Source: Corallochytrium limacisporum Hawaii
Lineage: Eukaryota; Protista; Pluriformea
Length of the DNA stretch: 50,219 nucleotides
Assembly (NCBI GenBank): GCA_002811645.1
Contig: PDIP01000146.1
Coordinates: 1 to 50,219, forward strand
Direction: 5' to 3'
The notes below the pieces were generated by a model. It was not told the origin of the DNA and ran no database searches. It saw only the letters and a list, made by a program, of their open reading frames with translations. Position numbers and translations under genes: made by a program. This document shows positions 1-50,219 of the stretch, piece by piece (positions within the stretch are counted from its first letter, which is position 1; every line of letters begins with the position of its first letter).

Positions 1-561
1 TTTGTACGACTACGATGTGTTCAATGTCAAGCCAAAGTCAAAATAGTCCTTTTTTGAGAGTAGCAGGGACTCTTCGTTTGAATCAGCTATTGAAATATTT
101 TTTTATGATTGTTAAAAAGAGCAAAATATAATGAAATAGAATGGAATCAATATAAGTTATTATACAATCAAGATTAAAAAAGATCCTCGGGAGTCAAATT
201 TTTCGGAGTTTTGACCCTAACATACCAGACAGAGGGTGGTACCAGGTACCCAAAAAAAAAGTAAAGAAAAAAGCAAAGAAAGAGAAGGTTGGAGGGAAGG
301 GGGCCTCTTTCCCGGGAGTCAAGGCCCTTCCTCTCCGCCTTCTCTCTTTCAGCACGGGGTAACCGAGTGCCCCTTGCGCAGGGGGCAGCCGCACTGAAAG
401 CCCGTGCACCCGACAAATCTCGCCTGAATGTCGGTCGTTCGTTGATCGTTAGACCCTAAGGGAGCGCGAGAGAATGACGAAAAGAGAACCGAAAAGCGAA
501 GGCAACGCCGTGACGAAGAGCGCAAATAAGTGGTATGGCACACACATTCACATTCACGAGC

Positions 562-579
562 GAGAGAGACACACGACAC

Positions 580-610
<31 letters not shown>

Positions 611-614
611 GAGA
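562..614. repeat. Imperfect (GA)n/(GACA)n microsatellite
   Basis: gagagagacacacgacacagagagagagagagagagacagacagacagagagag read directly. Confidence 0.85.
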
Positions 615-857
615 GCATCGGCAACGATGCCCGAAGCTATGAATAGAAAAACGGGAGGATGAGATGAGGAGGATGACGACAACTCTAGGAAGAATAAAAA
701 GTTAGGAAACAAAAGAAAAACGGGGCAGAATCAAATACCAAAGAACTTTCAATAGAAATAGCATAACAAATTGCTCGCTGTACTGCATACCACGAAGCAA
801 GGAACAAAAGAGATATCCTGCTTACCAAGCGATGCTCGTGCCGTGCTTGTTCTGAAC

Positions 858-4379: not shown

Positions 4380-4720
4380 GGTGGTATAGCGACATGATTT
4401 GCCACAAACTTCTTTCCTTCTCCTTCGTTTGCTGGCCTTATTTGCAAATGTTGACAAGGTTGTGGAATTGCGCCGTCTTTACGTCTAAACAATGACTTTC
4501 CATGTCTATTTGCAAATGTTGCAACTCTTAAACCGTGTAAGCACATCCCTCTGACATGCCAACGCGTATCGAACATCGCCATTAAGAAGGTTTCTTCCCC
4601 ATTTGACAGGGGGTTCAATTGTACAAGAATTTCCCTCAAACTCTTCCCGCCCCCTGCCATGTGTCCAACATTCCTTCCCTTTGGGATGTCACCATTTAGC
4701 ATAAAAACCCCGAAGTAGGG
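4380..4720 (-). pseudogene. Degenerate ankyrin-repeat gene fragment
   Basis: KGRNVGHMA / SNGEETFLMA / CLHGLRV..ANRHGKSLF: three GxTxLHxA-like motifs about 27-32 aa apart. The 5' side runs into a homopolymer patch. Confidence 0.35.
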
Positions 4721-6353
4721 GAAGGAGAAGAAGAAAAAAAAATTTCGATGCAGCTGGCCAAAGAGGCCTTTACGTCGCCCCCCCCCCCCGGGGCGCGGCC
4801 TCTCTTCCCCAGCCCCACAAGGAAGCACAGGGCCTCAGAGAACAGTCGCTGGTATCTTTCCTTTCCTCGCTCCCCCCCTTCCTCTGCCGGGCGTGTTGAG
4901 GGCGGAGCGAGCAGAGGAAGGGAGACGCGCTGGGTGCTTTTCACTGGGGATTTATGGCCATGGAGATTCAGTGTGGTTGGAAAGGGGGCAAGACTTGGTC
5001 AGTCATTCAATATCAAACAGATTCCTCGTGTTTTGGCCTCTTGGGAGTGAGGAATTCTGTCTTGCACAGCAAGAATTCTGTTTGCAGTTTCATAATGAGT
5101 GATCATTGCACGGCGGCCGCACTGCCAGTGGTTTTCCTTAATGTCATCACAATAGAATAGCTTGTACAGCGTCCGCAAACCACACACGCCCAAGCAGTAA
5201 TTGACACAACACCAACAAAATCGGCAAGCCGCCCCAACGTGAACAAGAGCACTGCTATAGAAAACCCACTAGACCATGGCGGTTGCAACGTGTGTGTGTA
5301 GGTAGCGGAGTTCATATTGCTGTTTGTACCATACTCGCGTGTACGGGAACATCTTCTGAATGGAACTGCGGAAACGGTCAGCACGTCACTGCCCGGTGCT
5401 GGCAGCTTATATATTTGTATACAAAGTACCACGGCAACATTCCATCAGGTCTCGAAAACGGCGCTCGCGGACGCGAGAATCTTTTCACCGATCGCCCTGT
5501 CCGCGCCGCGGTTCCTGGTGTGGCACTACATGGCCATGTGCAGTATAGGCATTACGTGGTGATCCAGCTATGTAAGTAGTGCACAAAGTTGTACCGCACG
5601 AGATCTAACCACTAGAGCGGTTCACGCTGTTTTAGTTTTTGGCAAACATAAACGTTAGATCTTAAGGTTGAATAGCTATTGAACGCTCCATCTAGCTGTG
5701 TCCTTTGAGAGTGGGAAGTGAAATCGACGACTTGGATACTACAGGGATCTTCAATGTGTCAAGCAATTTGATGAAACTTTCGTGGTGTATAGACATGTTG
5801 CAGTACCCATTGGTACTGTGTCTTCTGCCCCTACCAGCACCGCTCGTGCATGCTTTCCCAATCAAGGTTTTTTGTGGTATATTATACGTCTTCAATTGAG
5901 GTCACATTGGTGGCGAAACAGGGCAGCCCTGCGCTATGAGGGGGGCAACGACGAGTGTGTGCCTCCCCGGAAACAGGGCTCCAATCAACAAATTTGCGCA
6001 CTTCCAACCACACATGAAGGCTGGGCGAAATGCGAAAATGGCACAGGCCGCTCATCATGACATATCCCATAATAGAAAGTTCTGCTCTGGGTTTGGTCGC
6101 ACTTGGCATTGGCTTTCAAACGGACCGCAGTGACAAGATTGTTGCACAGTCTCGCCATGGCCCCACTATTAGACTGCGATACCATTGACTGAAGTGCAAA
6201 TGGCGAGAACATGCTCGAGGAAGCTCGAGAAGCCGCTGCCGCCCCCTGCCCAACCCACCCCTCCCCCTGGTGCTCTCGTGAAGTATGATCGTTGGGGGTG
6301 GTGGTGGATGGTGGGAAGAGGGAGGGGGCCTGTACTCCCCCCCTCCCTCCTTC

Positions 6354-6573
6354 NNNNNNNNNNNNNNNNNNNNNNNNNNNNNNNNNNNNNNNNNNNNNNN
6401 NNNNNNNNNNNNNNNNNNNNNNNNNNNNNNNNNNNNNNNNNNNNNNNNNNNNNNNNNNNNNNNNNNNNNNNNNNNNNNNNNNNNNNNNNNNNNNNNNNNN
6501 NNNNNNNNNNNNNNNNNNNNNNNNNNNNNNNNNNNNNNNNNNNNNNNNNNNNNNNNNNNNNNNNNNNNNNNNN
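6354..6573. other. Assembly gap (220 N)
   Basis: N run flanked by G/C homopolymer-rich sequence. Confidence 1.
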
Positions 6574-9500
6574 CCCCCACTCTCCTCCCCTCTCTTCTGC
6601 AGACCGGCGTTGCTTTCCTCCATCTCCCCCTCGTTCGGGAGGCCACCACCATTCTCAGCCAATTCTTTTTTTTTTGCGGGTATGCGCCCCTGATTGTACG
6701 TGGCCAAAAGAAGTTATTCCTCTGGCACGGTTTCTTGTTCTAGGTGCTAGTCACGAAGAAAAATGCCGCAACACAGGGGACGAGCATAATTTATTAAAGA
6801 GCGCACCAAAGCAAACATACATAGCCACCACTACGACATTCATCGGCTCTGTGGATTTCGGGTTGGTTCAACCATCACTACCATACCAAAGGGTTGCTCG
6901 AAAAAACCGCAAACTCTCGTTCTTTGGTGATTTGGGTACGTTAGGAAAAGTCTGTCTTTAACGTTGTGGAAAGCAAGCACGCCACCCTCAAGTGGCTTGC
7001 TCGCTAGTCTCATGTATCTGTCCCGCTTGTCCACAACACAAGTTGTAGGTGTGGTTATGTCCCATGGGATTAGTATGTCCATCACAATGTGTGCCACGGA
7101 AAGATAAAGTGTGATACATCAGAAGCGCTGAGTGGCGTGAACAACAATAGTGTACGTGCTCGGGCTGAGTGAATGGTAGCAGCTGGGAAGGCACAAAAGA
7201 AACTATTGCAGGTCACGGAAGAAGCACACAGTCACCGACGGCTTCGTTGTACGTTCTCCATCACTCTCTCTGTGTGTTCAAGTTCTTATTCCTTGGGTTC
7301 CCTCTGCATCTAGCAGGAGGAAGGTACCATGAGTGTGAGATCGTTTACGAGACAGTATCTTGGTGATGGTGACGGATGTTAACTGATTTTGTGGTATATG
7401 GGCAAGATTCTCTTTGGATCCACCACCATGTTTGTGATCTGGTTTGCCAGAATGTGTTCGATCGCACTGTCGGAGAGCAACCATATCATGCCGGATGCGC
7501 TTTGTTTACAACACTGGCCGCCGTTTTGCAAACATCCTTCCCGATAGGCGGATTGGATACAATTCTCATCTGTGAATGCATTTGTTTTTGTTCCTCCTGC
7601 CAAGCCTTTATAAGACGCATCTATTGCACAACATTCGAACTGACCGTATTGTCGAGCGAATTTTGTGATTTCAGTGTCTTCACCCTGGTAGGGTACCATC
7701 TCTGAGTATCAAACCTTCTCAACCCTCCCGTTCCGGCAGCGAATTCTCCAGCCTTCCTTCTTTGAGGTAATTTTTTTTTGTATCGGCCATAGAAGTAAAT
7801 TCGACAGGGGCAAAAATTGACTGCAGGTATCGGTAGTCAGGCCATTAGGTCTCCAACCAATTGAGGAAAAGGTTTGGGACAGAAGGGAAGGTAAAGTGGG
7901 CGCCGATGGTATGAATGTATGACTCTCGTTGGAGACTATGGGATTTATTGGGCCAAGGTATTTTTTTAAAAAAAAAAAAGATTTCTCTCGGCGTGTGTAC
8001 CCCTTCCCGTTTTTGTCTCAAGATTTACCTTTAGATGCGGATGTACCGTCTCCCGCCCATGCCTCGTGGACATAGTACAAACAAACTGAACATCGGTCAC
8101 AGATCTATTTTCACAGTAATTGGAATTACTCTTCAAATGATCTTGGCACGCTTTTGGGCAATCGGTCAGCTGTCAGCCAGGCAACATGGTTAGAAACACA
8201 AAAAATGAATGGATGTATCCTGGACAGAGTGAGGCAGGGTACTTCCTTGTGCATGTGAAGTAGTGAAGCTGCATGTTCTATGTATTGTACAGTCTCCAGG
8301 CGTGTATCTGCGGGCATTGGGCTCTCTCGATTTCATCATTTCATTCTTCATTTGTTGTTCAAAGATGTGGTAAATTCCCCTTGAAGAATTTTCTTCATAC
8401 ATTCTGTCTCAACCTGTACTGGGGTTCTAATTGTAACCGGGTAGAATTAAGGATGAATTGTTGATGTCGTTGAGGAAGTAACAAAGAGTACCTTGATCTT
8501 ATCTGCCACGGCAGAGGAAAATGTCGATGTGTTTGTACCTTGATGGCTTACTTGCGGTCCTGCAGCGTTACCCATACTTGCTCTCTACGATGCTGTCGCG
8601 ACGGTGGAATCACCAGCAATGCTAGAACAAAGATGAAAATCTGCATGTCGAATCCATTATGGACCATGCCGTAGTCCCCCAATGAAGTACGTCGCCTACC
8701 AGTTCGAGAACCGAGTTGCGGGCACTCCAGCATACAAGGCCTCTCCACGCTACAGCCATTATACAGCAATTAATATGGCTTAGCAGGCGGCAGTCATCGA
8801 TGTGCTTGTAGATTCAATATGTTGCTGCTGCTCTATTTGTTTCTGCAAAAGTAAACGACCATACGCGGTTCGTTCACGTACCAAAGCAGCATCGAATCCA
8901 AGAAACATCTCTTTCCGGAATCACTGAAAAAGAAGCTGATTGGATCTTTGTGTGTACTAGCAGATGTCAACAATAACCACAGAAACCTTATTTTTTATTG
9001 ATAGTAAACATATTGTACCAATTGCCGCGGCAGTTGTTCATCCCCCCAACCACAACCTTCCCACTTGTGTCAAACGAATCATTCTGAACGTGATGGTGGT
9101 CTACGTGGCTGAGAGTTTTTTTAGTGAGTTGTGGTAAGGTGAGCTAATGATAAATACTAAGCACCGTCCTTCCTGTGATCACAAACCCGGGAGTTCGACC
9201 CGTGTCGAACAATGCAGAAAATTGCTGGGAACATTTTCAATTTCTTTATATGAAACTCACATTTTTTTCGCTTTCAATGGAACTCTCTCGCTACTGCAGT
9301 GTTTGTCAATTTCTTTGTACGGTGGGCTGCGGATAGATTTCAGAGCGTCGGATTGCGTCGTTTCATTGCGTACGCCCCAGTAAAGGGAAAATAGAGAAAT
9401 AGTCTTAAGGTACACAGTGGGCGAGAAAAAAACCCCAATTTATACTCCCTCGACTGGGTTGCCCCTCTGCGTCGTTTCTCTGAGCACATCCCTCCTTGCG

Positions 9501-12040: not shown

Positions 12041-13191
12041 ACATCATTTTACACATCCACAGACAAACTCCCCGCATACGAGCAACTCACCTTTTTCAAC
12101 CTTACAATCGTTCCGGCTCCATTTACAACTCATCCTCGTTCGGTTTTGGGTCCGGGCCACAAAACCCGCGGCGAAAACGCTGCAGTCCGGAGAACTGCTT
12201 TAGGGTAGCAAAGTCTTAGTTTTCTGGAAACAGTGCCCTGACTATGAATATTGTCCAGGAAAAAAATAAGGTCTGTGGTCGCTGATGAAGTGGATTCTAA
12301 TGCTCCAGGGACGTTGCAGTGGCATCACGGCATTTTGACCCCGGTGTCGGCTACTAGCAACTTAAACGAAGGCGAAAAAGCAGCACCTCAGCCAAGGGCA
12401 ACGGGCACCCAACGAGTGCCCGTTTTGCGTCAGCAATAGGGTCAGCTGGTGCCCCAAAACACTTGCTATGGAGCCGAAGGGGAGCGGCAAAAAAGCCCCT
12501 CAGTCTTTAAGCCTGCTTTCCCCCCCCTCCCCTTCTCCTGCTCTCCTCGTTCCTTTCTCTCTTGCGCTCTTCGTGACTCTCTCCATTGTGGTGGAAAGGG
12601 AAGGGGAGGGGTTGGGATTGAGGGGGTGTGCCGCGCGGGGGAAAGGAGAGAAGGGAAAGGGATGTGAGAGAGCGAGGGGGGAAAAGAAAAGCGGGTTTTC
12701 CGTAGGGCACGCTAAAACGAAAAAAAAAGCCTGATGTTATTGTGTGTAGCAGCGGTGGACCCTTGTATATTTATATACACACCCAGTGTATACCACAACA
12801 TCAGGGAGGACCGCCCCCCCCCTTCCTTCTTCCCTCCTAAACCGCTGTGCGGTGGCCCCTTTCCCCCCCCCCCCCTCTCCCCGTTCCCTTCAATCCATAC
12901 CCTTCTATGGAGTCCCTGTGCAGTAGGCAAAGGAAAGAGAAACAGGCTCTTCGTTCTGCCCCAAACGGCAACAAAGGGAAAAGGAAGAGGGAAAAGGGGA
13001 GAAAGGCGAGAAGGGGGAGGGGGTGGGGAGAGGTGGAGCGGTTTGGGGAGGGGGGTAGAGGGGAGTGCTGGGATGACCGGTCTCGACTAGACAGATTGGG
13101 TACAGGTAATGGTATGAGAAGCATGATAGCATGAAGGTAAATCAGGAAGCGTAGAAGCAGACCAATAAGAAAAATTACAGACATTGACCAA

Positions 13192-13428: not shown

Positions 13429-13468
13429 CTGGCGGTGGCTGGTCCATCTCTGCTAACTATTCGTGACA

Positions 13469-13972: not shown

Positions 13973-14071
13973 TCATCTCAGCTCGCAATCCTTTTCGCAT
14001 ACTTTTTCCATACTTTTAGCATACCCCTTTTTTCCTCCATACATACACATTTCCATAATTGTTCCATAAAA

Positions 14072-15776
14072 CTATAGAAATACACCGGAACTTTTTCCTG
14101 TCCCTCTACTTAATACACACTTTGGCAGTTTTTCGATAATTCCCCCCCCCCTCCTTCTTTTCAACTTTTGACATTTTAACCACTCGCGTCCCCTTGTCAA
14201 AAGCCTCTTTGGCCACTTCCGTATCTTTGCGTCGACACAGGCTGTGTAGACAAAATCAAACAATACCTCAGAACGGTCAGAGGTCACAAACTGACCGACC
14301 GATACCAATGCACTCTCACTGCCCTTCCCCCCTCCCCCTCCCCCCCCCTCCCTCCTCCCCCTTCTCTTTTCGGGTTGGGAAGAGGGGAGGTCGGGTGTCG
14401 TCCCCTCGCCCCTTCCCCCGCAGTGCTGGTGGTAAACTAGCCCGCCGGGGAGAGAGAGAGAGAAAAGGAGACGGGGGAGGGGAGGGGGGGGAAGGAAGGT
14501 TTCCCCCCACTTGCCCCCTCTCTCTTTTTTCTCTTGGGTTGCGGGTTTTCGGGATTCCCTCACCGGGTCTCAACTCCCTCTTTGGTGCGCCCCTTCGTGA
14601 CCCACGGACCATTCCTCCCCGACCCACCTAACGGCAAGGGGAACTGCAGGGCGGGAGGGGAAGACCTGCAAGGGAGTTAGGGTCTAATTGGGGCCGAGAT
14701 CCCACAGAACCACAATGAAGCACACAATACACTCAGCAACTATTCCACGGCACTGCCTATACCACCGCATGCATTGCCCATGTTTGCCCAGATCTTTTGG
14801 TGGGTTCTCATACGGGTTGAGCATGCTTGGTTGGTGAGTTGGTTGCTTCCTGCTGCGATGTGCCGGTGCGCTTGGTGGCTCTGTGAGAGATCGAGGTCAT
14901 CATCCATTAAACCTGTAAACGATTGGGTTGGTCCATTTTGTGGTGACTGTTGGTGGATAGAAAGGCCGTTTCGCTTCGGTTCGTTCCATTTTATGCATTT
15001 CGCAGTTATTGTTTTGATGGTATGCGATGTACGGTGATGTCAGTCGTTTGCGAGCTCCGTACTGCAGAGCACTCGCCTCTTGCCGCCCACCTAAGATAGA
15101 CTGGACCGGAGGTGGGTTTTGTATTCATATCAGTGCGAGCCACTCCACGTATTGTTATCACACCCACACACAACCGCAAATGTATCGAACATGCAAGAGC
15201 AACATGCTCTGCTGTGCAGGCATTGTACTTTAACTGCCGATTGGGACCAGCTCGCGAGTTTGGTCCGAAGGATGAATGATGATGCAATGGTTTATAGAGT
15301 GTATTTGCGTACGCTTGCTGCAACCAGATCGGTGGCCAGTCATAGCCGGCAAGTACGCGATAGGTGGTTCAGTATGGGTGGCAATAGGGAAACCCACACC
15401 AATACTGACTGATCCCTTCGCCCTCCCCTCCCCCTCTCCTCTCCCCCATTCTGAACTCCCTATCCCAAAGAGGCAGAGCTCGAGCTCGATAAAGCAAGTT
15501 GCCTGTTGCCGAGAGCGTTTGCGGCGCCTTGTTCTCCATCGTGCCGTGCTGCACGCTTGCAAGTTGGTACACTGGTCCATTCATCTTCATAAATACTGTA
15601 GTCAGCAACTTGCCATCGCCAACAGCAAGGCATGCATCCTCGTCCTCACCATCGTCACCATCATCGTAGTGCGTATAGCGTCCTTGTATCCAATCGCATC
15701 CATACGAACACCCCATCAAACTGTTGAACTGGTGGTGTACCTCGCCAACAACATGACCAGAACATCCATCGCACAT
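14072..15776 (-). pseudogene. WD40-repeat pseudogene
   Basis: Colinear minus-strand WD40 pieces across frames: DGKLLTTVF..GPVYQLA; KGSVSI; MTGHRSG..IIIHPSDQT; VVCGCDNNTW; TSGPVYL; IVVLWDL..PLQVF..LAVRW; MVRGSRRGAPK; FVYTACVDAKIRKW. Interrupted by stops, frameshifts and a homopolymer patch. Confidence 0.6.
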
Positions 15777-16297: not shown

Positions 16298-19200
16298 GCC
16301 AAAGAAAAATCGACGTTAAAATTCTTCGCTCGGGCGCGCAGGCTTGCCTGATCAATTTTGCAATCCCCTTGCGCGCCTCTTGCATGTCACACCCCACGCG
16401 GTTTTTCTTGTTTGCACGCATTTCATTCCTCGGTGCTTCTTCAGTTTACGGTGTGTTACTATTGCTACAACTACCAACATTGCCCCGTGCGTTTGTGGTT
16501 AGTACTACCTATTCGCTGTATTTTCTATTTGGCTCATCACACAGCTATTGTCACGGTTCTCCACGATCTCCAACAACCGCAACGAAAACGAATCCAAATT
16601 TATGTCCCCCCCCTTGCCTGCGGCATCTCCCGGCGTCTCTAACACGCCCCACAGCAAAAATGACGGTACCGAAGAATGATACACCAACTGCAGAGATGAC
16701 GGGGCAGTGTCAGTCCATCGACTCTCTTCCCCCCCCCTTCCCTCCCTCTCCTTCTTCTGGTGGTTTTGTGTAGGAAGCTCGTCGTTCCAAAATTCGACTC
16801 CTACAAAACCAAACCTCTGACACTTCTCTACTTTGCAGCAAGAGTTTAAGCCGAAAACCGCACGACGTGAACGAAAACTGCACACCAAATATGTTAGCGA
16901 TGTCATTCAACTGCAACATGGATCCATACCGGGCACATGTGCGCATCGAACCGAGGGTATGTATGGTCGATCGGCTCCCTTTTAAAGTTGAGGAGTGTCT
17001 GTGTGCGGCTTTTGTTGTGCGCTCGGTGTTTTTGTTTTGTTCTTTTGTTTGTGTCTTTTAATTTGCCGCGCTGATATTTTCTCGGAGACCGTTTGCATAC
17101 ATCGCGGGCCTTTTTTCTTGCGAGTGCGCTCTTCTGTTTCTGAGTAGACACGTGCATTCATGGCCATGCATGGAAAGGTAATGCTTATATTGGGCCGCGA
17201 TCCATCGAGTCCCCCTCCCTGACGGTCATTCCTTGACGAAGTATTGAGTTAGTTCGAAGAAACAAAAAATTCGGTGGCCCACTGACCGAATTTTCTATGA
17301 GTAGGAATGGAAGATGTCTAGTGAAGGGCTTGGGCCGATGGCAGAATACTTTTTGGCCCTCTGTGACTTTGAGGCGGCGAGTTTGGCCACCACCAGCCTG
17401 GGTTCTTTGTCGCTCTTCTTCTCCCGCCGAGTGTCATCGTTCCGTCTTTGTATGACCTTTAAGCATGTATGCATCGTAAGGTAGGGTCGTGACGACTGCA
17501 TGTACCGTAGGGCAATAGCTATGAAAAAGGAAGCAGGGCATTAAAATTTAGGATTCGTCTGCTAGCGGATCTGGTCCTGCACTGCTCTTTTCCTGACTGC
17601 TGTACTGTTTTGATGACCAGGCCGATCTGCTAATTACATGGGCCCTGAAGCGGAGAGCCTTACCGCGACTTACCGGTGATTGAATAGGGCCCGTTACTTA
17701 CTGCCTACGATGGAAGAAAGGCGAAACCAAAACAACTTTCGATTGTCAAGAATGGTAGCAGTAAGAAACGCGGGGGTGTTGGGCAAGTCTCCTATTGGAA
17801 CTCCGTCCTCCTCATTTGTTTTTATCAGCACGCAGTAGTCTTGTAGTAAAAGTTCATTCTTGGTGCGTGTGCGGTTCGGAACCTTTGCGGGTTTCTGAAA
17901 TCACATACAATGGCATGAAGCTTACCCTACGACAACAGATGGATCGCTCGCCCGCTGCCCCCCCCCTCCCTCCCGAAACATGGTTTGGTTGGTGGGGGGA
18001 CACGAAGGAATGTTCGACTGTTGTTTGCTGTCACAGAGTCGTAGTATGGGAACGCATCGAGGACTTGTTTGGTTGGCCCAGATGTTTAGAAGGGAGAGGT
18101 TGGATAGAACTATTTGAGGCAAGGGGACGAAGGAGTGGACAGATGATTTATCGAGTATCCCCACACCTTCAGTATTTCTGGACTTGAAGAAAATTTTCTC
18201 TACTGTATATGTATGGAACCTAGACACACCCGATCCAACGACAATACTCTTTACGTCTTTAAAACGCTCCCGACGTCTGCATAATTAGCAACTGGTGCAG
18301 TCCCATGTTCTCTTATCAACACCTCTGTGTTGGTGTTTGATTTCGCCAGGATCAGATTGTATACTAAATGTATTCAAAAGTACGAAAAACATCGTACCGC
18401 CCCAGCGAAAACCCGAAAGTCAAACACCCACAATTCGTCATTATGATGTTCTTGTTGGGCCTGCCCGTCTGACCCTCCTCGCCTTTCCACTGGTGTCCTC
18501 GTTTACCGCGAACCCATGGTCACATTGGTCAGCCTACAAGGTATGGAAACAATCATGCACACTACCAGCAGGTGTTACCACCAAACAACATCGGCGTAGA
18601 ACGAGGCTCCACCCATGCGGTGCTGCCCAGCCCGTCGTCGTCTACCCACAGAATTTTATCATTTATTCACTATAGAGCTCAAGGCATTGGCGACAGGCCG
18701 GCAAGACACGCCACACGTAGCCCTGCCCGATGTCAAGACTAAGTGGAGGAGCTCACAAGACACTCACATACTTAGCGAGGAAATTGGTGGGTTTTCCATC
18801 GCAATACTAGGAGAGGCCCGTGTGCGCCCGTTGTGCCCTTCGTGGACTTTTAACCAAGGGTGAAAGGTTTGTACAAACCTTGCGCCTGGGTAGCTAAACA
18901 CCCCTCCCCAAGGAGGTGAATTTGACTTTAGTCATATTGAAAAGTCATTGTTTTTGTATACAAGACACGAGTAGACGATCTCTATGTCAGTTGTGTGTTT
19001 GTGTTTCCGCTACTTGTTTTTTTTCAGCATTCATATTATCTTCTTGGTATTGCGCCTTACCTTCCCATGTGCAGGAGCGCTGTTTCAGTTTTTCTCTCCA
19101 AGGAAATGATCGTGTTCCCAAGTCAATATCATCACTCTTTCATTATTAAATGGTATTCGTTCATGAAGAGTAACGTCCTAGACATGAATGTGGTGTGGCG

Positions 19201-23354: not shown

Positions 23355-23360
23355 CACACA

Positions 23361-25795: not shown

Positions 25796-25871
25796 CCTTC
25801 CTTCCTTCCTTCCTTCCTTCCTTCCTTCCTTCCTTCCTTCCTTCCTTCCTTCCTTCCTTCCTTCCTTCCTT
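25796..25871. repeat. (CCTT)19 tetranucleotide microsatellite
   Basis: Direct reading; pure polypyrimidine mirror repeat. Confidence 0.97.
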
Positions 25872-25980
25872 GCCTGTGCTGCGTCTCCCGGTCACTTCCG
25901 CGGGCCCGCCTCGCGCTCTCGTGCTGGCTCCGCAAAGGTAAACCCATACAAAAAAAAAGATAGGAATTAAAAAGAAAAGT

Positions 25981-27382: not shown

Positions 27383-27718
27383 ACACCACCCTCCCCCCCC
27401 GGAGGAAGAGAGGGAAGGAGGGGGGGGGGTAGTTTTTGGTTACAGCGGTGGGCAACATCGCGGGCGTATCAGGCGGGAGCCCCGGGCCGAATTTTGGCCA
27501 AGTTAAAGGAAAAGGGACAAAAAAAAAAGAACCGGTCGACTCCGATCCGCGCGGTTGCGGCCAGAGACGAGAAAAGCTTCCGCAGCACAGATTTCTCCGC
27601 CTTTGCGATGAAGGAACAGAAAGTGAGCTGGCAGCGGGAGCCGGTAGGCAACCCCCCGGCCTGCGACCGATTTCACCGCAGCAGGCTTCCAATAGATTTT
27701 TCGACACTTTCTGCCTGC

Positions 27719-33265: not shown

Positions 33266-34027
33266 AATGAACAAGTCCCCCCTATTGACTTTGTCTATGA
33301 TCTTCCGGTCCACTCCCTACGATACCATCATAGTGTTCACCAGTATCGTGTAGCGAAATTTGCACACTAGTACGTCTATCGACCAGATGATATGGTCCGA
33401 GTACTCATTCAAATAGCCCTGATAGAGCCCAATGTCCATCGTCCTCAAAACAACATCGAAAACGTGAAAGTTCACCAACTGAAACGGTCGTCCCTGAGAG
33501 CCTAAATAAAGAGCCGAAAAAGCCAGCCCCTTTGGTCCCTACGCAGGCTTTCGCTTGGCTGCAACCTCTCCCCTATCCTATGGGTCTGGCAGGATAAAGG
33601 GCCGAAGGAGTGACACATAAGACTACACTCAAGCGAGAGGGGAGCCACCCAAGGCAAAACAAAATCGCAGCTGGAGAAAACGCCCGGAGGGTGGGGGGGG
33701 AGGGGATCGAGGAAATCCCGAAAAAATGCACTAATTAGATTCCCGTATATTGAAAAGAAGGGGTCTGTGGCAGGTGATAATGAATGGCCCTTGTAAGCCA
33801 AGAGTGGAGTGGCCTAGCGAGAAAGGCCCCAGCTGTCCCCTCGGGTCTCATGGGGATCGCGGTGACGGTGTGGGACGTGCACGGCAGTTCGACGGAAACA
33901 AGGTGGACAACGCCGAACAAGCTATATCAAAGATCTTGGCGTGTTGATTCGGGTTGTAAGGAGTGACTTTTTCATGTACCTATCACGATTAGAAGCACAC
34001 AAGTACATCAGTTGCTTCTGAATCAGC

Positions 34028-39999: not shown

Positions 40000-40258
40000 G
40001 ATGGAGGTTTGAAATCAATCTATTTCCTAATTTGTCCTACATTATTCTATCAGACTATCTACACATCCTACAGTACATACCTGGAGGTCTGTCATATGCC
40101 CGGTCGTGGCCTGGGATCCATTGTCACTGCGGGTCTCAAAGTACCTGAGCTCGGACCCTTCATGTTGAACCCTTCGCGCCAGAACCAAAAGGGGGGGGGG
40201 AGGGGAAAGGGTAGCCCTCAACAAATCAATACCACCAAATCCCAGTCGTTTATAAGGT

Positions 40259-41872
40259 CTACTCATCATCGTCGCTGTCGTCGTCCTCATCAGACGACGA
40301 CTCCTCACTGCCGGTTTCGTAGGCGTCCATGCTCTGCAAGAGCTTCCAGGATTGGAAGTTTTCCATGTCGATGGACCAGAGATCAGAGTAGGTGACGCTT
40401 CGGTCGGCCTTCTCATAGTATCCGCTGTAAAGGTATAGAGTTTTCCCGATTGTAGTTAGACCGGCGTTGGCCCGCGGGCTTGGCCATTCCTCGGGCTTGA
40501 CTTCTTTCGTCAGCTCCTTGACTTCTTCCTTCATAGCCGCGTCCGCATTGGCAGCTTTGCGTTCCTCTGCTTCCAACTTTTGTGGTGGGACGGCTCCCTT
40601 CTTGCTCTTGCCCTTTCCCTTACTGGCCTTCAGTAGATTCCTCCTATCTAGCGCCGCTTTTTGCTTTCTACTGTGGATTTCTTCAATTTTCTCCATGATC
40701 TCCTTGGTCTCGACACCTTCCTTGACAGTTATGTCATATACCAATGATCGGCCAAAGTTCACACCCTGAAAACCACACTGAAAGTGTCCGCGGAGACTTT
40801 CTTCATTTTCCATGTCCACGACCCCACCGAAGAGCAGAAGATGTCCTCGGTGACTGATGGACGAGGCAAATCCACTGCCTTTGGGAAATGCACCATGAAG
40901 CCGCACTGTCTCCCACTTGAATTGATTCTTTAGCTCGTCGCCCAGACTTTGATCAAAGACTAGTCGCCAAACATCAGCATGAACCTCACCCTTTTCAATC
41001 TCACCCTTGACGCGCTTGCGACTGTACCCACCGAGTAGATACGCACTATTCATAGGTTTCTCCGACCTGGCATCGCGTTCTGTGACAAAGTGCATGGCGC
41101 TACGAGGGCTAGGTACAAATATAGTGGTGCCAAAATCGATCTTTGTCCAAGAATAAGTTTCCAGATTCAAAGCATACAAGTCATTGAAATATTTGGGTGT
41201 CCCCTTGCCATCGTCATGAAAGCCTCCGAACAGTACAATCGATACAGGGGGGCCAGGGATGAGGATCATTCGATGACCACTCCGGGGTGAGGGGATATCC
41301 CCCTGTTGTTTGATTTGTTCCCATTTGCGATCTTCCACATGGAAAAGCCAAAGATCGTTGTAATGTCGGAATTGTGATCCCGTTGGTGATGTGAATTCTC
41401 CGCCGAAGACAAAGATCTGACCGCCGAAGACGGGTCTCACTGCTCCATGGTGGCCGCACCGTGGCTTTGGTGCATACGATGACATGTGGATGCTCCACTC
41501 ATTCGTGGAAGGCTTGTAGGTTAACAGTTCATTGTTTACATGGTGCTTGTGATTTTCCATTCTTTCACCCCCAAATACGAACAACTGCTCCACAGATTGG
41601 CTCGGCCAGCTGTTCATAAGGAAATTGATCCTGTGTTTCGGATGCTCCGAAAGCGTGCGCGTTATACACGCCGGGCCTCTACCCAATTCATCGAGTTCTA
41701 CTCCTTCAGTCTCTAAGGCATCTAACTCCGCAATTATTGCGTCTAAGTCCTCCTCCTCGAAGTTTTCCGCCCTGGCCGCTTCCTTTCTTGCTTCCTTCAA
41801 TTCTTTGATCAGCTTCTTTTCTTTGCGCTGCACGCGCTTCTTTCGCCGATCCTGTGCGTTCTCCCGACCCAT
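40259..41872 (-). CDS. KLHDC4: Kelch domain-containing protein 4 (Kel3-like)
   Basis: Basic N-terminus then EEDLDAIIAE; kelch repeats with FGGEFTSP..QFRHYNDLW, PSPRSGHRM, FGGFHD, PSPR..LYLYSGYYE; acidic tail. Confidence 0.9.
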   Translation of the reverse strand: MGRENAQDRRKKRVQRKEKKLIKELKEARKEAARAENFEEEDLDAIIAELDALETEGVELDELGRGPACITRTLSEHPKHRINFLMNSWPSQSVEQLFVFGGERMENHKHHVNNELLTYKPSTNEWSIHMSSYAPKPRCGHHGAVRPVFGGQIFVFGGEFTSPTGSQFRHYNDLWLFHVEDRKWEQIKQQGDIPSPRSGHRMILIPGPPVSIVLFGGFHDDGKGTPKYFNDLYALNLETYSWTKIDFGTTIFVPSPRSAMHFVTERDARSEKPMNSAYLLGGYSRKRVKGEIEKGEVHADVWRLVFDQSLGDELKNQFKWETVRLHGAFPKGSGFASSISHRGHLLLFGGVVDMENEESLRGHFQCGFQGVNFGRSLVYDITVKEGVETKEIMEKIEEIHSRKQKAALDRRNLLKASKGKGKSKKGAVPPQKLEAEERKAANADAAMKEEVKELTKEVKPEEWPSPRANAGLTTIGKTLYLYSGYYEKADRSVTYSDLWSIDMENFQSWKLLQSMDAYETGSEESSSDEDDDSDDDE

Positions 41873-42040
41873 AATATATGTCTAATCGATTTCAGCGACA
41901 AAGTCTTTTCCTGTTCATACATCCTGGCTTGCATGTCAAGCAAATCAGAGGGTCTCGAGTACCCTCCGGAACGCCTCTGCGGTTCGCTTGCGCAGTACCC
42001 CTTCGCTTTTGTCACGCGGGTCTTTGACTCCCTCACTCCC

Positions 42041-42084
42041 TGGGGGAGGGGGTACCCTCCTCTGGGGGAGGGGGTACCCTCCTC
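42041..42084. repeat. Perfect 22-bp tandem duplication (TGGGGGAGGGGGTACCCTCCTC x2)
   Basis: Identical copies at 42041-42062 and 42063-42084, each with a GGGTACCC palindrome. Confidence 0.9.
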
Positions 42085-42290
42085 TCGTTGTGGGGAGGAG
42101 TTGAACCCGGCAGTTCGGGGCGCGCACTTCTCAGACAGGGTCGGTCATTGCCAGTGCTGGTATTTCCGGCATTGTGGGCATAACAGTGTGAAACGAAATG
42201 ATACTTCGATCTGGAAAAGGTAAATGCTGTAAAGGAAGCACATTGATAGATATGATTAATGCATATTTGAGTGGGTCGTAGCAGAAAGCC

Positions 42291-46800: not shown

Positions 46801-47480
46801 GCAGCAAAAGCGTAAAAATCGATAGCAGCATCACCACCACCTACCAAAGTCCAAACCTTGTCAAATTGCACCTTGGTCAAACGCTCCCGGGACATCAAAA
46901 ATCGACGCACCTTTTCCTTGTCAAGCTTTGCGCGCAAGGGAAGGCATTCTTGAAAACTCTTCCTGTAGGCCTCACGTTCCTCTGTGGAAATATTGTACTC
47001 CCTAGAGTCAATAGTTGCAGGTGCATGGAAAGCAGGAGGTCTCGGTACAGGACCGTTGCTCGTGTTGCTCCCCATGCTATGCAGACTCGTCATACTGCTC
47101 ATGCTGCCTATGCCACCATAGCCACCAGCTTGTTGAGCATTGAGCATTCCTGGTTGAGGACCAGGGCCCATACTCATCATATTGTTGCTCATCATACCCG
47201 GTCCCCCCATGCTCTGAGGACCCATCATTCCGGGTCCACTCATACTTTGGGGTCCCATCATGCCACCAGGGCGCATTCCTCCGTACATTGGCTGACTCAT
47301 CATGTTGGGTTGACCCATCATGTTGGGCTGACCCATCATGTTGGGCTGACCCATCATATTCGGCTGTCCACCCATCATGCCCATACTCTGTGGCGCACCC
47401 ATCTGCCCATACACTTGGGGTCGTGTGGGTTGCCCGTACATACCGGTAAGACCCGGAGTAATTGGTCGTTGGTTGCTCAT
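43836..47480 (-). CDS. ITSN: Intersectin, short-form architecture (2 EH, coiled coil, 5 SH3; no DH-PH-C2)
   Basis: EH2 WSIPSSTRLKYNQIF; E/R/Q/K coiled coil; five SH3 domains (ALYEY..DELTF..WWFG..GWFPANFV etc.), the fourth carrying the intersectin-type insert LQVRGKQR. The ORF ends right after the fifth SH3. Confidence 0.9.
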   Translation of the reverse strand: MSNQRPITPGLTGMYGQPTRPQVYGQMGAPQSMGMMGGQPNMMGQPNMMGQPNMMGQPNMMSQPMYGGMRPGGMMGPQSMSGPGMMGPQSMGGPGMMSNNMMSMGPGPQPGMLNAQQAGGYGGIGSMSSMTSLHSMGSNTSNGPVPRPPAFHAPATIDSREYNISTEEREAYRKSFQECLPLRAKLDKEKVRRFLMSRERLTKVQFDKVWTLVGGGDAAIDFYAFAASCKLAAVAKQGKPLPSTLPMQLNSRTIRNQENDPNFNLQAAHSNGAGVMAAPVQPSGDWSIPSSTRLKYNQIFSEYSRARRRDRMDMQEIKRNMLTTGLHQDVLLHLWRLVRPPSEYGMSQDEFVTVMHLCEQVQQGRPPPSYLPPVLMSRAMKQQMTGLSPRDDTPQKSSSLTNLAPDANAGNEFLRQKQEEMRRMQEQEKETHMKREMERQEMERKKREAQEKMRMRQELEMRQRQELEYQRQMERQQFAYAEMERRQREEAERQQRLMEERREQEMRMRKKALAKQLLEIRDIYKSRFDTLNTDINGLKGKIKKNGDNYAEYLKTRRERKNYIDVLEKEQKKLQAAKAKVHDKQKDVNSADDKIRKLQIDRRNMFMQNEDGSAAKEAEDHMVRALAHASREVADMRSKLQQAKKQLERMEERYHKTNLNLNHTRNYKKLLQERLDKTRREKTDRARKEQVEKEEAARRKREEEDLRKREEEIRKNRAAQEAAERQREEEAHKRRLEEDKARTAALGATAAMDMGGVGEVLFEAVALYEYKGTEGDELTFQDGDIIEVRNDADEWWFGQINGKEGWFPANFVERKEKLENMTVQQAAVADETEAAPAEFNPFGDAEDSATAEAARPSTVSMAAADDTGAVDTSVAYEAIFPYQAQQEDELEFNEGDLITVLQAPEGGWWEGQVGTKTGWFPASYVTKTDKSAGDTGAPVAAEPAAPATPVTAEPEPEPVPVPEPEPEPVEEPPPLRPPPPVDTTPAPSSDEKKVIAVFDFAGDREDDLKFQEGDVIVVTERSDDGWWAGELNGRTGWFPENYVEEYTGQAPSGGDAGAFPRDTSPEGAGLVPVDETGKVIEAYKAQGDGELSIKKGQIIQITSKGDEWCEGTLQVRGKQRVSGRFPTRCIKFLPKKDNRSRANTGEDMTPASVPLSEPSSKGESFTAVYDWVAQQEDEVSFNEGDVVIVLERADNGWWKGEVNGRVGMFPSNYVE
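47298..47369 (-). repeat. Coding 18-bp tandem repeat x4 (GQPNMM) in intersectin N-terminus
   Basis: catcatgttgggYtgacc units; translation GQPNMMGQPNMMGQPNMMGQPNMM. Confidence 0.9.
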
Positions 47481-48603
47481 GATTCACTGCTTCCACGGTC
47501 TAAACAGTGAGTCTTTCAATTCCCTTCGAAACCAGATCTAAGTCCACAACATTCTGCGACATTTCCCAGTTATCTATTGAACTCGAGCCGGGTCTATTTC
47601 GACGAATTCTGATCACGTTCTTCTCCAGTTTTCAAATAGCCACTGCAAATGCGACTGCCCTAGCATATGACTTGAGGGACTAACGCATAGAAGAACAAGA
47701 ATAATGGCTAATGAGACATACAAGTTCTTGAATCCAGTGTGACAACATCAGTTCATGATTCTTGAGTGTTAAAAGCCTCACAAGGCATTCGCACAACATC
47801 AGCGGTGGATTACGATCACCCCATACGTGACTCTCTCCCCCGCTACCGACCGTCGATCCTCGGCCCGCCGGGAGAGTCATAACAGAACCAGCCTCACGTA
47901 GTGAATGTACCAGAACCCTGCCCCAAGGTGGGACAGGTGATGATTTGTAGTGCCTTTTGGTCCCCCCCCCCTTTTTTTTCTATTTGCCCCTTGCTTACTG
48001 GGGGGTCCATAACAGTGTGATTATTTCCCAAATGTTCGGACGTGTGCTGCGAAAACCATTATTACTTGCTCGGAGTTGGATGCTTTGTGTGCCATATCGG
48101 CCGCTGTCGTTCAGGTTGCTCCGTGAACCGCGATGCGATCGTTAGCCCCCAAGCGGAGCCGTGCAAATTGAACAAGGGCTGCAGTTAAAAAACGCCAATT
48201 CCCTTCAAGATCTGGGACACGCCTAAACAGTGAGTTGTGTCCACAATGCAGGAGCTCGTGAAACCGGAATCACCAGCAATGAAAACATTACGACGCGCCT
48301 CGTATTGTACCTGCTTGTTGTATACGTTTATCCTCAACCCTTTCCCGCTCTTCGTCCGCTACCTCTCCCCCCACCAACTCTATCCGCCTCCCTGTCTATT
48401 TGGACGACCTCCGGTTGCCTCTGTTGTGATACTGAAAGTGCCTGTGTATTGGCAAGACACACAGGGAATAATCGATGTCCCTCTAATACTGAGAAAATGT
48501 GGGATGGACCACCACAGGGTATACGTGTTATATCAGCATGTTCATGCTGTACAAGGGTGTGGGGTTGCGCATTAGTACTATGCACAGACCCAGTAGGCCA
48601 ATC

Positions 48604-49357
48604 TTATGTAGTTTGATCAATCACACACCAAGTTTGGGAGCCCATTGACCAAACTCGCACTTTCTGCTGCAGGTGAGTTCTGGTCGTTCGGTTGTACAAT
48701 TCGCCTTGGTATCGAATTCTCCTCCCATAGGTCGGCTTCTCAAACGGGCCGGCCAACCAAGCAAAAGGCAAAACAAAACAGCACCTCCGGTAGCCAATGT
48801 ACGACAGAGCAGGAACCATAGACATTCGCAGTGAAACCGGCAATCGGAATCACCCTTGCTCGCACTTGAGGCTGGTGCCTTAATGCGTTCCGTTGGCTGC
48901 TTCGGGGACTGTGTCAAAAGTGGCCACCGTTCTGGAGAAGCACCGGGACCACTACTCCTTCGTGGTCCGTGTGTCGGCCAGTTTCTCAAGTCGAAGTCAA
49001 AAATGGGACCTGTATATTTGTCACCTGCCACGCGCGGTCATCTCACAAAAGCTTGCGGGGAAAACATTGAAGGGTCCCGGAATGTTGCACCGATAGTCCT
49101 TGTGCATCTGTCTCGTGCACATACGCACTATCCGGATGTTTAAATAGAGGTGCGTATCTGAATCCGTCGCGTGAACATGCCAGCGTCATGTTCACCTTTG
49201 CAATAACCCGCTCCGGCAAGGAGTTAAAGAACAAAGTGATTGTGGAGACGACGTCTCCAATCCCCCGGCCCTCCCCTACGGGCGGCCGAGCGTGGGGGAT
49301 ACTGAATTCCTCCTCCCCCTTGGCGATGTGTTCTAATTTCGCGGGGCCCGCAGTCAT
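48604..49357 (-). pseudogene. Second WD40-repeat gene remnant
   Basis: Minus-strand fragments in different frames: TLACSRDG, GPIFDFDLRNW, RTLATGGA, KVRVWSM, all WD40 strand c/d-type motifs. Confidence 0.4.
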
Positions 49358-50219
49358 TCATTCACCCACTGGCGCAGGCCTTTCCCTGATCAGAGAGAGT
49401 GTAATGGGTGTCCCGCCTCAGCTGGGCCTCCACTTTCCCAATTGACCCGCCCCAGCCCCCCGGGGGGGGGGCCTCGGCCCTGGGGGGCTCCCTTCCCGGA
49501 GTGAGGGGATCTCCCGCTTTGCCGGTGGTCGCAGTGCATCCCACTTTGCTTCGCAGACGGGCCAGTACTGTGTTTTTTTTCACGCTTTCAATATTTTGAC
49601 CCTTCTTTTCCCCTTAGGCGAGAACTCTGGTTGGTTGTCCACTCGCCAGGGAGGAGAGGGGGTTAAGGAGGGTGTGCTGGCTGTGTTGATGTGCCTCTTT
49701 CGACACACACACGGCAACCAGGCACAGAGCGAGTAGGGACTGAGGAGCTCCTTCTACCAAAACACCCCGGTTCCCAAATTAATGAACGTTCAGTACTTGG
49801 TCATCTCTCGTCTCCCCCAGCAGTTTTTCAGTCTTCAACGGTTTCTTTCTAGTCCACCACCACCGCTCGCTTGGTGGGGGACACACGGGACTACCAACTA
49901 TCTCTTCCGTCTGGGTCTGCCCCGTGCCTTTGTGATTCGTGGCCTGTTTTGAAACGGGGTCCCGGGGACCCCCGCTCTGAAACGAGAGGTAGGCCCACGG
50001 TGGCGCTGAATGGGAGCGGCCTGGAATCGCGAGCAAAAAAAGAAAAAAAACGCCGGACCCGGGGAGAACGGCGGGGTTGGAGGCCTTCAGCAGCAACATA
50101 GATTCAATTTCCTGGTCAATATAATTTGTACCACCCTCTGTCTGGGAATATTGTATCAAATCTACTCTTTTTGATTTAGCTCTGCCGTCGCTTGGGAGAG
50201 CGGGAAAATTTTGACAGAT

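What the first reader, a model, noticed from the sequence alone, without database searches (positions are those of the whole stretch)
170..50100. Discrete 'homopolymerised' patches that avoid all intact CDS: candidate focal neighbour-copying mutational process
Seen: about 20 patches (e.g. 190-420, 4700-4990, 6230-6700, 7720-8010, 12480-13080, 14000-14680, 19220-19790, 22190-22700, 25640-26300, 26880-27540, 33500-33860, 40170-40240, 41990-42130, 47950-48010, 49250-50100) where ordinary-complexity sequence grades into runs of G, C, A and T and back. They share no obvious sequence with one another, so they are not a repeat family. None falls in the ~18 kb of long intact ORFs, yet the three larger spacers in the gene block each contain one. 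Inference: a random sequencing defect should also break ORFs, so exclusion from CDS suggests a real localised process purged by selection from functional genes. Candidates are slippage or misalignment synthesis that copies the adjacent base, for example at break-repair tracts, origins or open chromatin. Caveat: out-of-phase short reads give the same texture, and two patches flank N gaps.
Basis: partly seen in the sequence, partly recalled or inferred. Interest (0 to 1): 0.8.

Follow-up and report, generated by a model that had tools for sequence, protein, structure and literature searches.

The report
Homopolymer-rich islands in non-coding DNA
The run-rich patches are real DNA, not sequencing debris: they are ordinary slippage-type low-complexity islands that fill about an eighth of the non-coding DNA of a single-celled relative of animals. 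They are unusual only for their many long G/C runs and for C-run/G-run palindromes that occur in one orientation only.

Summary
Confirmed. I patches (3.9 kb, 12% of the window's non-coding DNA, none in its seven coding ORFs). In them 38-46% of bases repeat the previous base, against 27% for the window. Markov simulations give only 0.2 kb of such sequence.

- **Real DNA, not read tails.** Contigs built independently from two Illumina libraries cross the two largest patches with 0-2 differences.
- **Genome-wide.** The genome is Corallochytrium limacisporum by earlier notes and by size. In 250 kb I find 111 patches, and 192 runs of 8 nt or more in non-coding DNA against none in coding DNA.
- **Fits replication slippage ('cryptic simplicity'), not plain neighbour copying.** Short motifs recur locally 2-7 times more often than dinucleotide shuffles allow. 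Run lengths show a shoulder at 8-11 nt.
- **Repair genes look intact.** Mismatch-repair and translesion polymerase genes are present as open frames.
- **Location.** Patches favour promoter-bearing spacers (31/39 against 4/22 convergent) but also fill gene-free DNA.
- **Gap edges are less reliable.** Two of 14 gaps are false: their flanks overlap and differ by run length and by neighbour-matching substitutions.
- **Unexplained.** G/C 12-mers outnumber A/T 12-mers fourfold. C6G6 occurs at 819 sites and G6C6 at 9.

Many first-stage notes on other windows of this genome reported the same islands.

The parts
193..349 (.). patch (A/G runs, then C/T runs)
   Evidence: same-as-previous 0.44; read
   Evidence: 0.42
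4579..4838 (.). patch holding a C12G4 junction at 4778-4793
6230..6700 (.). C/T-rich low-complexity flanks of the N gap 6354-6573. Below my patch threshold. Continuity across the gap is unknown.
   Evidence: (0.38/0.35)
7926..8042 (.). patch with T7A12
12448..13076 (.). largest patch: pyrimidine-rich halves followed by purine-rich halves, with a C14 run. It ends about 155 nt upstream of the 5' end of the RNA contig of the Nudix gene.
   Evidence: (contigs of X1 and X2 cross it; one 1-nt difference at 12863)
14085..14223 (.). patch, C/T-rich, just 3' of the Nudix gene
14294..14585 (.). patch, C-rich then G-rich
   Evidence: (one X1 contig is collinear across 12861-18000)
19192..19316 (.). patch
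19643..19725 (.). patch
22181..22670 (.). patch. The 249-aa ORF 22061-22810 that overlaps it fails my coding filter (codon score and at most 30% patch) and is taken as a low-complexity artefact.
25717..25882 (.). patch built around a perfect (CCTT)19
26008..26296 (.). patch, T/C-rich, with a 37-nt degenerate tandem
26908..27065 (.). patch at the left edge of N gap 27066-27382 (A5G14, C11). The detail is less trustworthy here.
27383..27565 (.). patch at the right edge of the same gap
33636..33766 (.). patch in the divergent spacer between the CAP-Gly gene and the PreP peptidase gene
40132..40265 (.). patch (A4G10 and following) about 190-215 nt upstream of the MCM gene ATG
42031..42122 (.). patch with a 22-nt tandem quasi-palindrome in the Kelch/Prp31 divergent spacer
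47900..48045 (.). patch (C11T8) upstream of the SH3/EH gene
49394..49542 (.). patch holding a C6G10 palindrome at 49456-49471
50006..50116 (.). patch
25330..25564 (.). N gap with ordinary-complexity flanks (0.33/0.28). It is not part of a patch.

Best explanation
The patches are real islands of 'cryptically simple' DNA. They are purine- or pyrimidine-rich tracts made of homopolymer runs and scrambled 2-6-nt motifs. They make up about 12-13% of the non-coding DNA of this compact, intron-free genome.

Inferred mechanism: ordinary replication slippage. Short motifs and runs duplicate locally. Once a run passes about 7-8 nt its slippage rate jumps and it drifts to 8-12 nt or more, so simple sequence breeds more simple sequence and forms foci. 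Selection removes such frameshift-prone sequence from coding DNA and from the very short 3'-to-3' spacers. It survives in all other non-coding DNA, most densely 400-900 nt upstream of start codons, where it may secondarily serve as nucleosome-disfavouring promoter DNA.

Shown: reality of the sequence, genome-wide occurrence, exclusion from CDS, higher-order repeat structure, the run-length shoulder, and an apparently intact repair gene set. Inferred: slippage as the cause, selection as the filter, and any promoter role.

At the edges of assembly gaps part of the texture is technical, because contig ends there carry 'homopolymerised' versions of the true sequence.
For: **Reality of the sequence**
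- Logan contigs of two DNA libraries (contig-mean word depth about 660-860 and about 160) cover 12001-18000, including both big patches. They show 0-2 other letters and one 1-nt difference in a C14 run. No alternative-letter rows were reported.
- The libraries were MiSeq paired-end and HiSeq 2000 Nextera mate-pair, both four-colour chemistry. The assembler was SPAdes plus GapCloser.

**Exclusion from coding DNA**
- 192 runs of 8 nt or more lie in 153.6 kb of non-coding DNA, and none in 96.6 kb of coding DNA.
- Patch cover is 11% of non-coding DNA.

**Higher-order structure**
- Local non-homopolymer 6-mer repeats: 1182 observed against 528 in whole-patch dinucleotide shuffles and 824-876 in 25-40-nt block shuffles.
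- 8-mers: 470 against 64 (whole-patch) and 149-182 (block).
- Runs of 9 nt or more: 107 against 20 (whole-patch) and 42-56 (block).
- TRF finds (CCTT)19 and other short-unit arrays inside patches.

**Run lengths**
- In non-coding DNA successive-length ratios are about 0.3 up to 6-7 nt, then 0.8-1.1 for 8-11 nt. In coding DNA the decline is geometric and stops at 6-7 nt.
- Published thresholds for the onset of mononucleotide slippage are 7-10 nt (PMC2940325).

**Repair genes:** six MutS_V, two MutL, four Y-family polymerase and four XPD/FANCJ-family open frames without stops.

**Not a repeat family:**

**Gaps sit in patches:** mean same-as-previous in gap flanks is 0.387, and 8 of 14 gaps are flanked by a patch against 23% expected. 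This is what hard-to-assemble real low complexity would give.
Against: - All read evidence is Illumina and comes from one sample. Contig depth is a per-contig mean, so local depth and strand balance inside patches were not seen.
- Two of 14 gaps are false. Their flanks overlap by 41-50 nt and differ by a 2-nt run-length change, a lost interrupting base and three substitutions. In each substitution one version carries the base of the neighbouring run, for example C12G7 on one side against an interrupted C8-A-C4-GG-T-GGG-A on the other. Some 'homopolymerisation' at contig ends is therefore technical or allelic.
- Slippage is inferred from statistics only. No polymorphism or mutation data were available.
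- Plain insertional slippage does not explain the one-way order of abutting runs (C6G6 819 against G6C6 9).
- It does not obviously explain why G/C 12-mers outnumber A/T 12-mers fourfold. Eukaryotic mononucleotide repeats are normally A/T-dominated (PMC12699852).
Confidence: 0.6

Rival explanations
1. Selected promoter or origin architecture. The islands, and above all the long G/C runs and C-run/G-run palindromes, are kept by selection as nucleosome-excluding or bidirectional initiation elements. Slippage only supplies the variation.
For: - Promoter-bearing spacers hold a patch in 31 of 39 cases, against 4 of 22 convergent spacers (Fisher p = 7e-6).
- 47 of 62 genes have a patch within 1 kb upstream.
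- Patch cover is about 0 in the first 100 nt upstream of the ATG and peaks at 400-900 nt.
- Runs of 6 nt or more upstream peak at 200-600 nt.
- G-quadruplex-type motifs occur at 3.9 per kb in patches, 0.24 in other non-coding DNA and 0.02 in coding DNA.
- The CnGn excess is about 90-fold over its mirror image, which looks like a specific element.
- Patch 12448-13076 ends about 155 nt before the 5' end of the Nudix RNA contig.
- Homopolymer tracts flank nucleosome-depleted regions in other protists (PMC4194402). T. brucei origins lie between oppositely oriented poly(dA) and poly(dT) (PMC13179062).
Against: - The association is confounded by spacer length. For spacers of 150-1500 nt it is 13/20 against 2/10, p = 0.05.
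- In tandem spacers the shift towards the downstream ATG is not significant (n = 17, p = 0.53).
- About 26 kb of the window (1-27.7 kb) has only one coding-like gene yet holds 15 patches.
- CnGn density per kb is similar in divergent (0.18), tandem (0.30) and 'convergent' (0.15) spacers of my sample.
- G and C runs show no sense-strand preference upstream (53 against 52).
- No chromatin or transcription-start data were available.
Confidence: 0.2
2. Mostly technical. Out-of-phase Illumina read tails and GapCloser extension wrote 'homopolymerised' letters into difficult regions, so the texture overstates what is in the cell.
For: - The assembly was gap-closed with SOAP GapCloser.
- Gaps lie preferentially in patches.
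- Two false gaps carry overlapping flanks in which one copy is the smoothed version of the other.
- Contigs of one library break in the C14 run at 12861-12882, and the other library differs there by 1 nt.
Against: - Interior patches are crossed by long contigs from an independent assembler that uses no gap closer, in both libraries, with no alternative letters.
- A random technical defect would also hit coding DNA, yet no run of 8 nt or more occurs in 96.6 kb of it.
- Both instruments use four-colour chemistry, so there is no dark-cycle poly-G.
- Smoothing keeps the order of runs and cannot create the C-then-G polarity. An interior junction also needs reads that bridge to unique flanks on both sides.
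Confidence: 0.1
3. A genuinely new focal, polar mutational process. A polymerase or repair pathway rewrites a base to match its neighbour in a base- and direction-specific way, for example G runs advancing 3'-wards. This would make run junctions one-way.
For: - A G run has another run at its 5' end at 1087 sites, against 70 for the reverse order.
- The asymmetry holds only within 20 nt.
- In the two false gaps all three substitutions change an interrupting base into the base of the flanking run.
Against: - No single direction rule fits all four junction classes. T6A6 is commoner than A6T6 (28 against 5), which breaks the 'A/C then G/T' rule. A pyrimidine-then-purine rule does not explain A6G6 (176) over G6A6 (25).
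- First-order models fail.
- The substitution sample is three events in G-rich context and may be sequencing error.
- The repair gene set is ordinary.
Confidence: 0.07

Closest known systems
Cryptic simplicity / slippage-generated simple sequence (Tautz et al. 1986 and later work, as cited in PMC2940325)
   Same: Clusters of scrambled short motifs and runs, over-represented against composition, confined to unconstrained DNA. Over-representation of mononucleotide runs starts at 7-10 nt.
   Different: All four bases contribute equally at 8 nt or more, and G/C dominates at 12 nt or more. Abutting runs have a fixed order.
Over-represented intergenic homopolymer tracts as nucleosome-exclusion signals (Apicomplexa: PMC4194402; yeast poly(dA:dT), Segal and Widom 2009 as cited there)
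   Same: Overlong tracts enriched in intergenic DNA near gene ends and absent from most coding DNA. Patterns are lineage-specific.
   Different: There the tracts are mainly poly(dA:dT) and lie immediately next to ORFs. Here G/C tracts are at least as common, the first 100 nt upstream of the ATG are free of patches, and nucleosome data are lacking.
Polar homopolymer arrangement at Trypanosoma brucei replication origins (PMC13179062)
   Same: Initiation zones lie between oppositely oriented homopolymer-rich sequences with strand-specific G4 motifs and low nucleosome occupancy. This is a precedent for one-way run pairs.
   Different: That case concerns poly(dA)/poly(dT) at mapped origins. Here the runs are directly abutting C and G runs, and no origin or transcription map exists.
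Illumina phasing errors and gap-closer artefacts at contig ends
   Same: The texture is the same. It was seen here at two false gaps, where one flank is a smoothed copy of the other.
   Different: Interior patches are reproduced by an independent assembly of two libraries and avoid coding DNA.
Dislocation (transient misalignment) mutagenesis at runs (Kunkel; from my own knowledge, not checked here)
   Different: It is not known to build islands of hundreds of bases. Nothing here measures it.

Membership tests
Slippage-generated simple sequence (cryptic simplicity, mononucleotide microsatellites) | Local recurrence of short motifs above what base and dinucleotide composition give | tested here: met
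   6-mers 1182 against 528 (whole-patch shuffles) and 824-876 (block shuffles). 8-mers 470 against 64 and 149-182.
Slippage-generated simple sequence (cryptic simplicity, mononucleotide microsatellites) | Runs over-represented above a threshold length of about 7-10 nt | tested here: met
   Shoulder at 8-11 nt in non-coding DNA. Thresholds from PMC2940325.
Slippage-generated simple sequence (cryptic simplicity, mononucleotide microsatellites) | Length polymorphism between individuals or strains | tested here: inconclusive
   Only a 1-nt difference in a C14 run between two libraries of one sample and run-length differences between overlapping gap flanks. No second strain was reachable.
Slippage-generated simple sequence (cryptic simplicity, mononucleotide microsatellites) | Depletion from coding sequence | tested here: met
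   Runs of 8 nt or more: 0 in 96.6 kb coding, 192 in 153.6 kb non-coding.
Nucleosome-excluding promoter tracts | Enrichment on the promoter side of genes, independent of spacer length | tested here: inconclusive
   31/39 against 4/22 overall, 13/20 against 2/10 when length-matched (p = 0.05). The tandem-spacer shift is not significant.
Nucleosome-excluding promoter tracts | Fixed position relative to transcription start sites; nucleosome depletion | not testable with these tools
   RNA contigs were seen for one gene only. No chromatin data.
Sequencing or assembly artefact | Not reproduced by an independent assembly or a second library | tested here: not met
   Both libraries' Logan contigs match across two patches.
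Sequencing or assembly artefact | Hits coding and non-coding DNA alike | tested here: not met
Sequencing or assembly artefact | Absent on an independent platform | not tested
Interspersed repeat or transposon family | Patches share non-trivial sequence with each other | tested here: not met
   One marginal 30-nt hit among 111 patches with the filter on. Stretch 12400-13150 is unique in the genome.

The most novel reading that the evidence does not exclude
The abutting C-run/G-run palindromes (C6G6 at 819 sites against 9 for G6C6) may be a discrete, undescribed element of this lineage. More generally, a G run carries another run at its 5' end at 1087 sites against 70 for the reverse. The element could be a minimal bidirectional promoter or origin signal made of two outward-facing G tracts. 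Alternatively it could be the footprint of a strand- and base-specific mutational process acting in open DNA.
Probability: 0.25. Interest if true: 0.7.

Novelty: new variant of a known kind. Interest (0 to 1): 0.4.

Why it matters
- **For users of this genome.** The islands are real, so they are not a reason to distrust the assembly as a whole. Sequence within some tens of bases of N gaps should not be trusted letter by letter, and some gaps are false.
- **For biology.** A 50% G+C eukaryote in which long G/C runs outnumber A/T runs goes against the usual A/T dominance of eukaryotic mononucleotide repeats. So does a genome in which C-run/G-run junctions are almost strictly one-way.
- **If the junctions prove functional.** They would give a simple handle on promoters or origins in a transfectable close relative of animals, provided they mark start sites or nucleosome-free DNA.
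- **If they reflect a polar mutation bias.** They would be a clean natural read-out of it.

Tried and rejected
All genome statistics rest on 250 kb plus whole-genome pattern counts.
- **Second strain or transcript contigs** via the Prp31-like protein: nothing on record.
I found no evidence that patches overwrite genes.
- **GGGTCTC-like motif** that I thought recurred near patches: not enriched in non-coding DNA.
- **Patch-scale 'pyrimidine half then purine half' order:** only about 1.4-fold at 100-400 nt and none closer.
- **'A/C runs precede G/T runs' rule:** refuted by T6A6 being commoner than A6T6.
- **Broad GC-skew switch around CnGn:** weak, n = 21.
- **tRNA and Rfam scans** of the window: nothing.
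- **Literature:** no paper holds both 'Corallochytrium' and 'homopolymer' in a relevant sense. One literature search found nothing. Three paper-tool calls failed on syntax.

Full report
**What the window is.** It is eukaryotic and intron-poor. Six long uninterrupted ORFs at 27.7-47.5 kb encode a CAP-Gly protein, a PreP-type M16 peptidase, an MCM, a Kelch protein, a Prp31/Nop protein and an SH3x5/EH protein. Earlier notes of this scan name the genome Corallochytrium limacisporum. I did not test that by phylogeny. It does fit the assembly size of 24,109,830 bases in 286 contigs against the published 24.1 Mb and near-zero intron density (PMC5560861). It also fits the run metadata: DNA runs of 2017 from a multi-species study and RNA runs of 2015. 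The first 27.7 kb hold only one ORF with coding-like codon usage, a Nudix hydrolase at 13469-13972, plus a small ORF just upstream. No tRNA or Rfam family is present.

**The observation.**
- A simple caller (80 nt, at least 0.44) gives 20 patches. That is 3919 nt before merging and 4046 nt after, against a mean of 187 nt (maximum 734) in first-order Markov simulations.
- Runs of all four bases are lengthened. AA, CC, GG and TT are enriched 1.6-1.9-fold, transitions-type neighbours (AG, GA, CT, TC) are neutral, and purine-pyrimidine steps are depleted. The patches are therefore purine-only or pyrimidine-only tracts full of runs.
- They are unrelated in sequence.
- None lies in a coding ORF. The three promoter-bearing spacers of the gene block each hold one, and the two convergent spacers hold none.

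**Artefact or DNA?** The published assembly used SPAdes on MiSeq paired-end and HiSeq 2000 Nextera mate-pair reads, followed by SOAP GapCloser. The only runs offered were Logan contigs of two DNA libraries of what is probably the source sample, and two RNA libraries. I laid them on 12001-18000, which holds the two largest patches.
- One library (contig-mean depth about 660-860) covers the stretch with two long contigs that overlap in a C14 run.
- The other (about 160) covers it with five contigs that overlap at 14334-14368, 14740-14769 and 15437-15466; no listed contig bridges 14325-14334.
- Differences from the window are 0-2 letters per contig and one 1-nt difference in the C14 run at 12863. 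No alternative-letter rows were reported.
- Logan uses neither SPAdes nor a gap closer. The patches are therefore not the work of the assembler or of a few poor read tails.
- The limits: both libraries are Illumina, they come from one sample, and contig depth is a per-contig mean.
- The RNA contigs cover only 13231-14088. Patch 12448-13076 lies upstream of that transcript, and 14294-14585 was not seen as RNA.

**Gaps.**
- The three window gaps have non-overlapping flanks. I could not lay reads on them, so their continuity and length remain unknown. Nothing below depends on them.
- In the 250 kb I could examine, gap flanks are run-rich (mean 0.387). Eight of 14 gaps touch a patch, against 23% expected.
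- Left flanks end C-rich and right flanks begin G-rich.
- Two gaps on another contig are false. The last 40-48 nt before the gap and the first 41-50 nt after it are the same locus. They differ by a 2-nt run-length change, a lost interrupting base and three substitutions, in each of which one version carries the base of the neighbouring run.
- This is either late-cycle phasing error kept at contig ends or allelic variation. The gap-flanking patches 26908-27065 and 27383-27565, and the flanks of 6354-6573, should not be trusted letter by letter.

- It holds 91 patches at the same density, 11% of non-coding DNA.
- Over both pieces there are 192 runs of 8 nt or more in 153.6 kb of non-coding DNA and none in 96.6 kb of coding DNA. 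They are shared almost equally among A, C, G and T.
- Many first-stage notes on other windows of this genome describe the same islands.

**What process.** A neighbour-only (first-order) process should be fully captured by dinucleotide frequencies. It is not.
- Non-homopolymer 6-mers recur within 40 nt 1182 times, against 528 in whole-patch and 824-876 in 25-40-nt block dinucleotide shuffles.
- 8-mers recur 470 times, against 64 (whole-patch) and 149-182 (block).
- Runs of 9 nt or more number 107, against 20 (whole-patch) and 42-56 (block).
- TRF finds short-unit arrays in patches, including a perfect (CCTT)19.
- The non-coding run-length histogram declines geometrically (ratio about 0.3) to 6-7 nt. 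It then flattens (ratio 0.8-1.1) for 8-11 nt. Coding DNA stops at 6-7 nt.
- That is the classical signature of length-dependent slippage, with published thresholds of 7-10 nt (PMC2940325).

I therefore read the patches as slippage-generated cryptic simplicity, filtered by selection out of constrained DNA. This is an inference from pattern, not a measured mutation spectrum.

**Promoters?**
- Spacers that contain at least one promoter hold a patch in 31 of 39 cases, convergent spacers in 4 of 22 (p = 7e-6). Convergent spacers are short, with a median of about 160 nt. Among spacers of 150-1500 nt the contrast is 13/20 against 2/10 (p = 0.05).
- Patch cover is nil in the first 100 nt upstream of start codons and highest at 400-900 nt.
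- 47 of 62 genes have a patch within 1 kb upstream.
- In tandem spacers the bias towards the downstream gene is not significant.
- The gene-poor first half of the window carries 15 patches.
- G-quadruplex-type motifs are 16 times denser in patches than in other non-coding DNA.

A promoter or nucleosome-excluding role is plausible by analogy (PMC4194402) but is not shown here.

**What is unusual.**
- Genome-wide, G12/C12 windows number 5130 against 1323 for A12/T12. Eukaryotic mononucleotide repeats are normally A/T-dominated (PMC12699852).
- Abutting runs have a fixed order:

| Junction (6+6 nt) | Sites | Mirror image | Sites |
|---|---|---|---|
| C6G6 | 819 | G6C6 | 9 |
| A6G6 plus C6T6 | 176 | G6A6 plus T6C6 | 25 |
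| C6A6 plus T6G6 | 92 | A6C6 plus G6T6 | 36 |
| T6A6 | 28 | A6T6 | 5 |

- The common rule is that a G run has another run at its 5' end, at 1087 sites against 70.
- The excess of C run before G run exists only for spacings under 20 nt.
- From run densities I estimate 8-75 chance C6G6 sites. The feature is therefore an excess of CnGn, not a lack of GnCn.
- I argue that a technical origin is unlikely. Smoothing preserves run order. An interior junction needs reads bridging to unique flanks. Extending contigs with degraded read tails would, if anything, give the opposite order. Several gaps sit exactly between a C run and a G run, which suggests that long CnGn are under-counted.
- No CnGn site was checked at read level.
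- Plain slippage does not predict this polarity, and no single direction rule that I tried fits all four classes.
- In my 250 kb, CnGn density per kb does not differ clearly between spacer types. The promoter specificity proposed by first-stage notes is not confirmed here.

**Verdict.** The sequencing-artefact rival is rejected for interior patches and accepted for gap edges. The proposed new mutational process is not needed for the patches themselves, because ordinary slippage plus selection suffices. The G/C-run richness and the one-way run junctions remain unexplained and are the part worth following up.

Noticed in passing
whole genome G000; window 4778-4793 and 49456-49471: C-run/G-run palindromes are one-way. 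C6G6 occurs at 819 sites and its mirror image G6C6 at 9. Other run pairs are also ordered (A6G6+C6T6 176 against 25; C6A6+T6G6 92 against 36; T6A6 28 against 5).
   Followed up: partly
whole genome G000: G12/C12 windows (5130) outnumber A12/T12 windows (1323) in a genome of about 50% G+C. This is the reverse of the usual eukaryotic pattern.
   Followed up: partly
L005 (C239:48444-48616) and L019 (C239:189650-189778): Two N gaps are false. The sequence before and after the gap overlaps by 41-50 nt. The differences are in run length, plus substitutions that match the neighbouring run in one copy.
   Followed up: yes
window 1-27700: About 26 kb with only one coding-like gene (Nudix, 13469-13972) and no tRNA or Rfam hit. 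It is ordinary-complexity DNA of unknown origin between the patches.
   Followed up: partly
window 25796-25871, 23355-23426, 20558-20662: Perfect (CCTT)19, near-perfect (CA)36 and a degenerate (TG)n array of about 105 nt.
   Followed up: no
window 42036-42085: A 22-nt unit repeated 2.3 times, each unit a G5-A-G5 / GTACCCTCC quasi-palindrome. It lies in the divergent spacer between the Kelch and Prp31 genes.
   Followed up: no
Eight ORFs there give no credible Pfam match.
   Followed up: yes
window 12863: The C14 run differs by one base between the two DNA libraries of the same sample. Contigs of the deeper library break inside this run.
   Followed up: partly
window 5985-6961 and 26841-27937: The 'ORFs' of 221-299 aa listed across the N gaps exist only because N is read through. 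They should not be annotated.
   Followed up: yes
L001 (C239:3823-4062): Four CnGn sites lie within 240 nt in a 1156-nt spacer between convergent genes. Two of them have near-identical flanks 85 nt apart (a local duplication). There may be an unannotated transcription unit.
   Followed up: no
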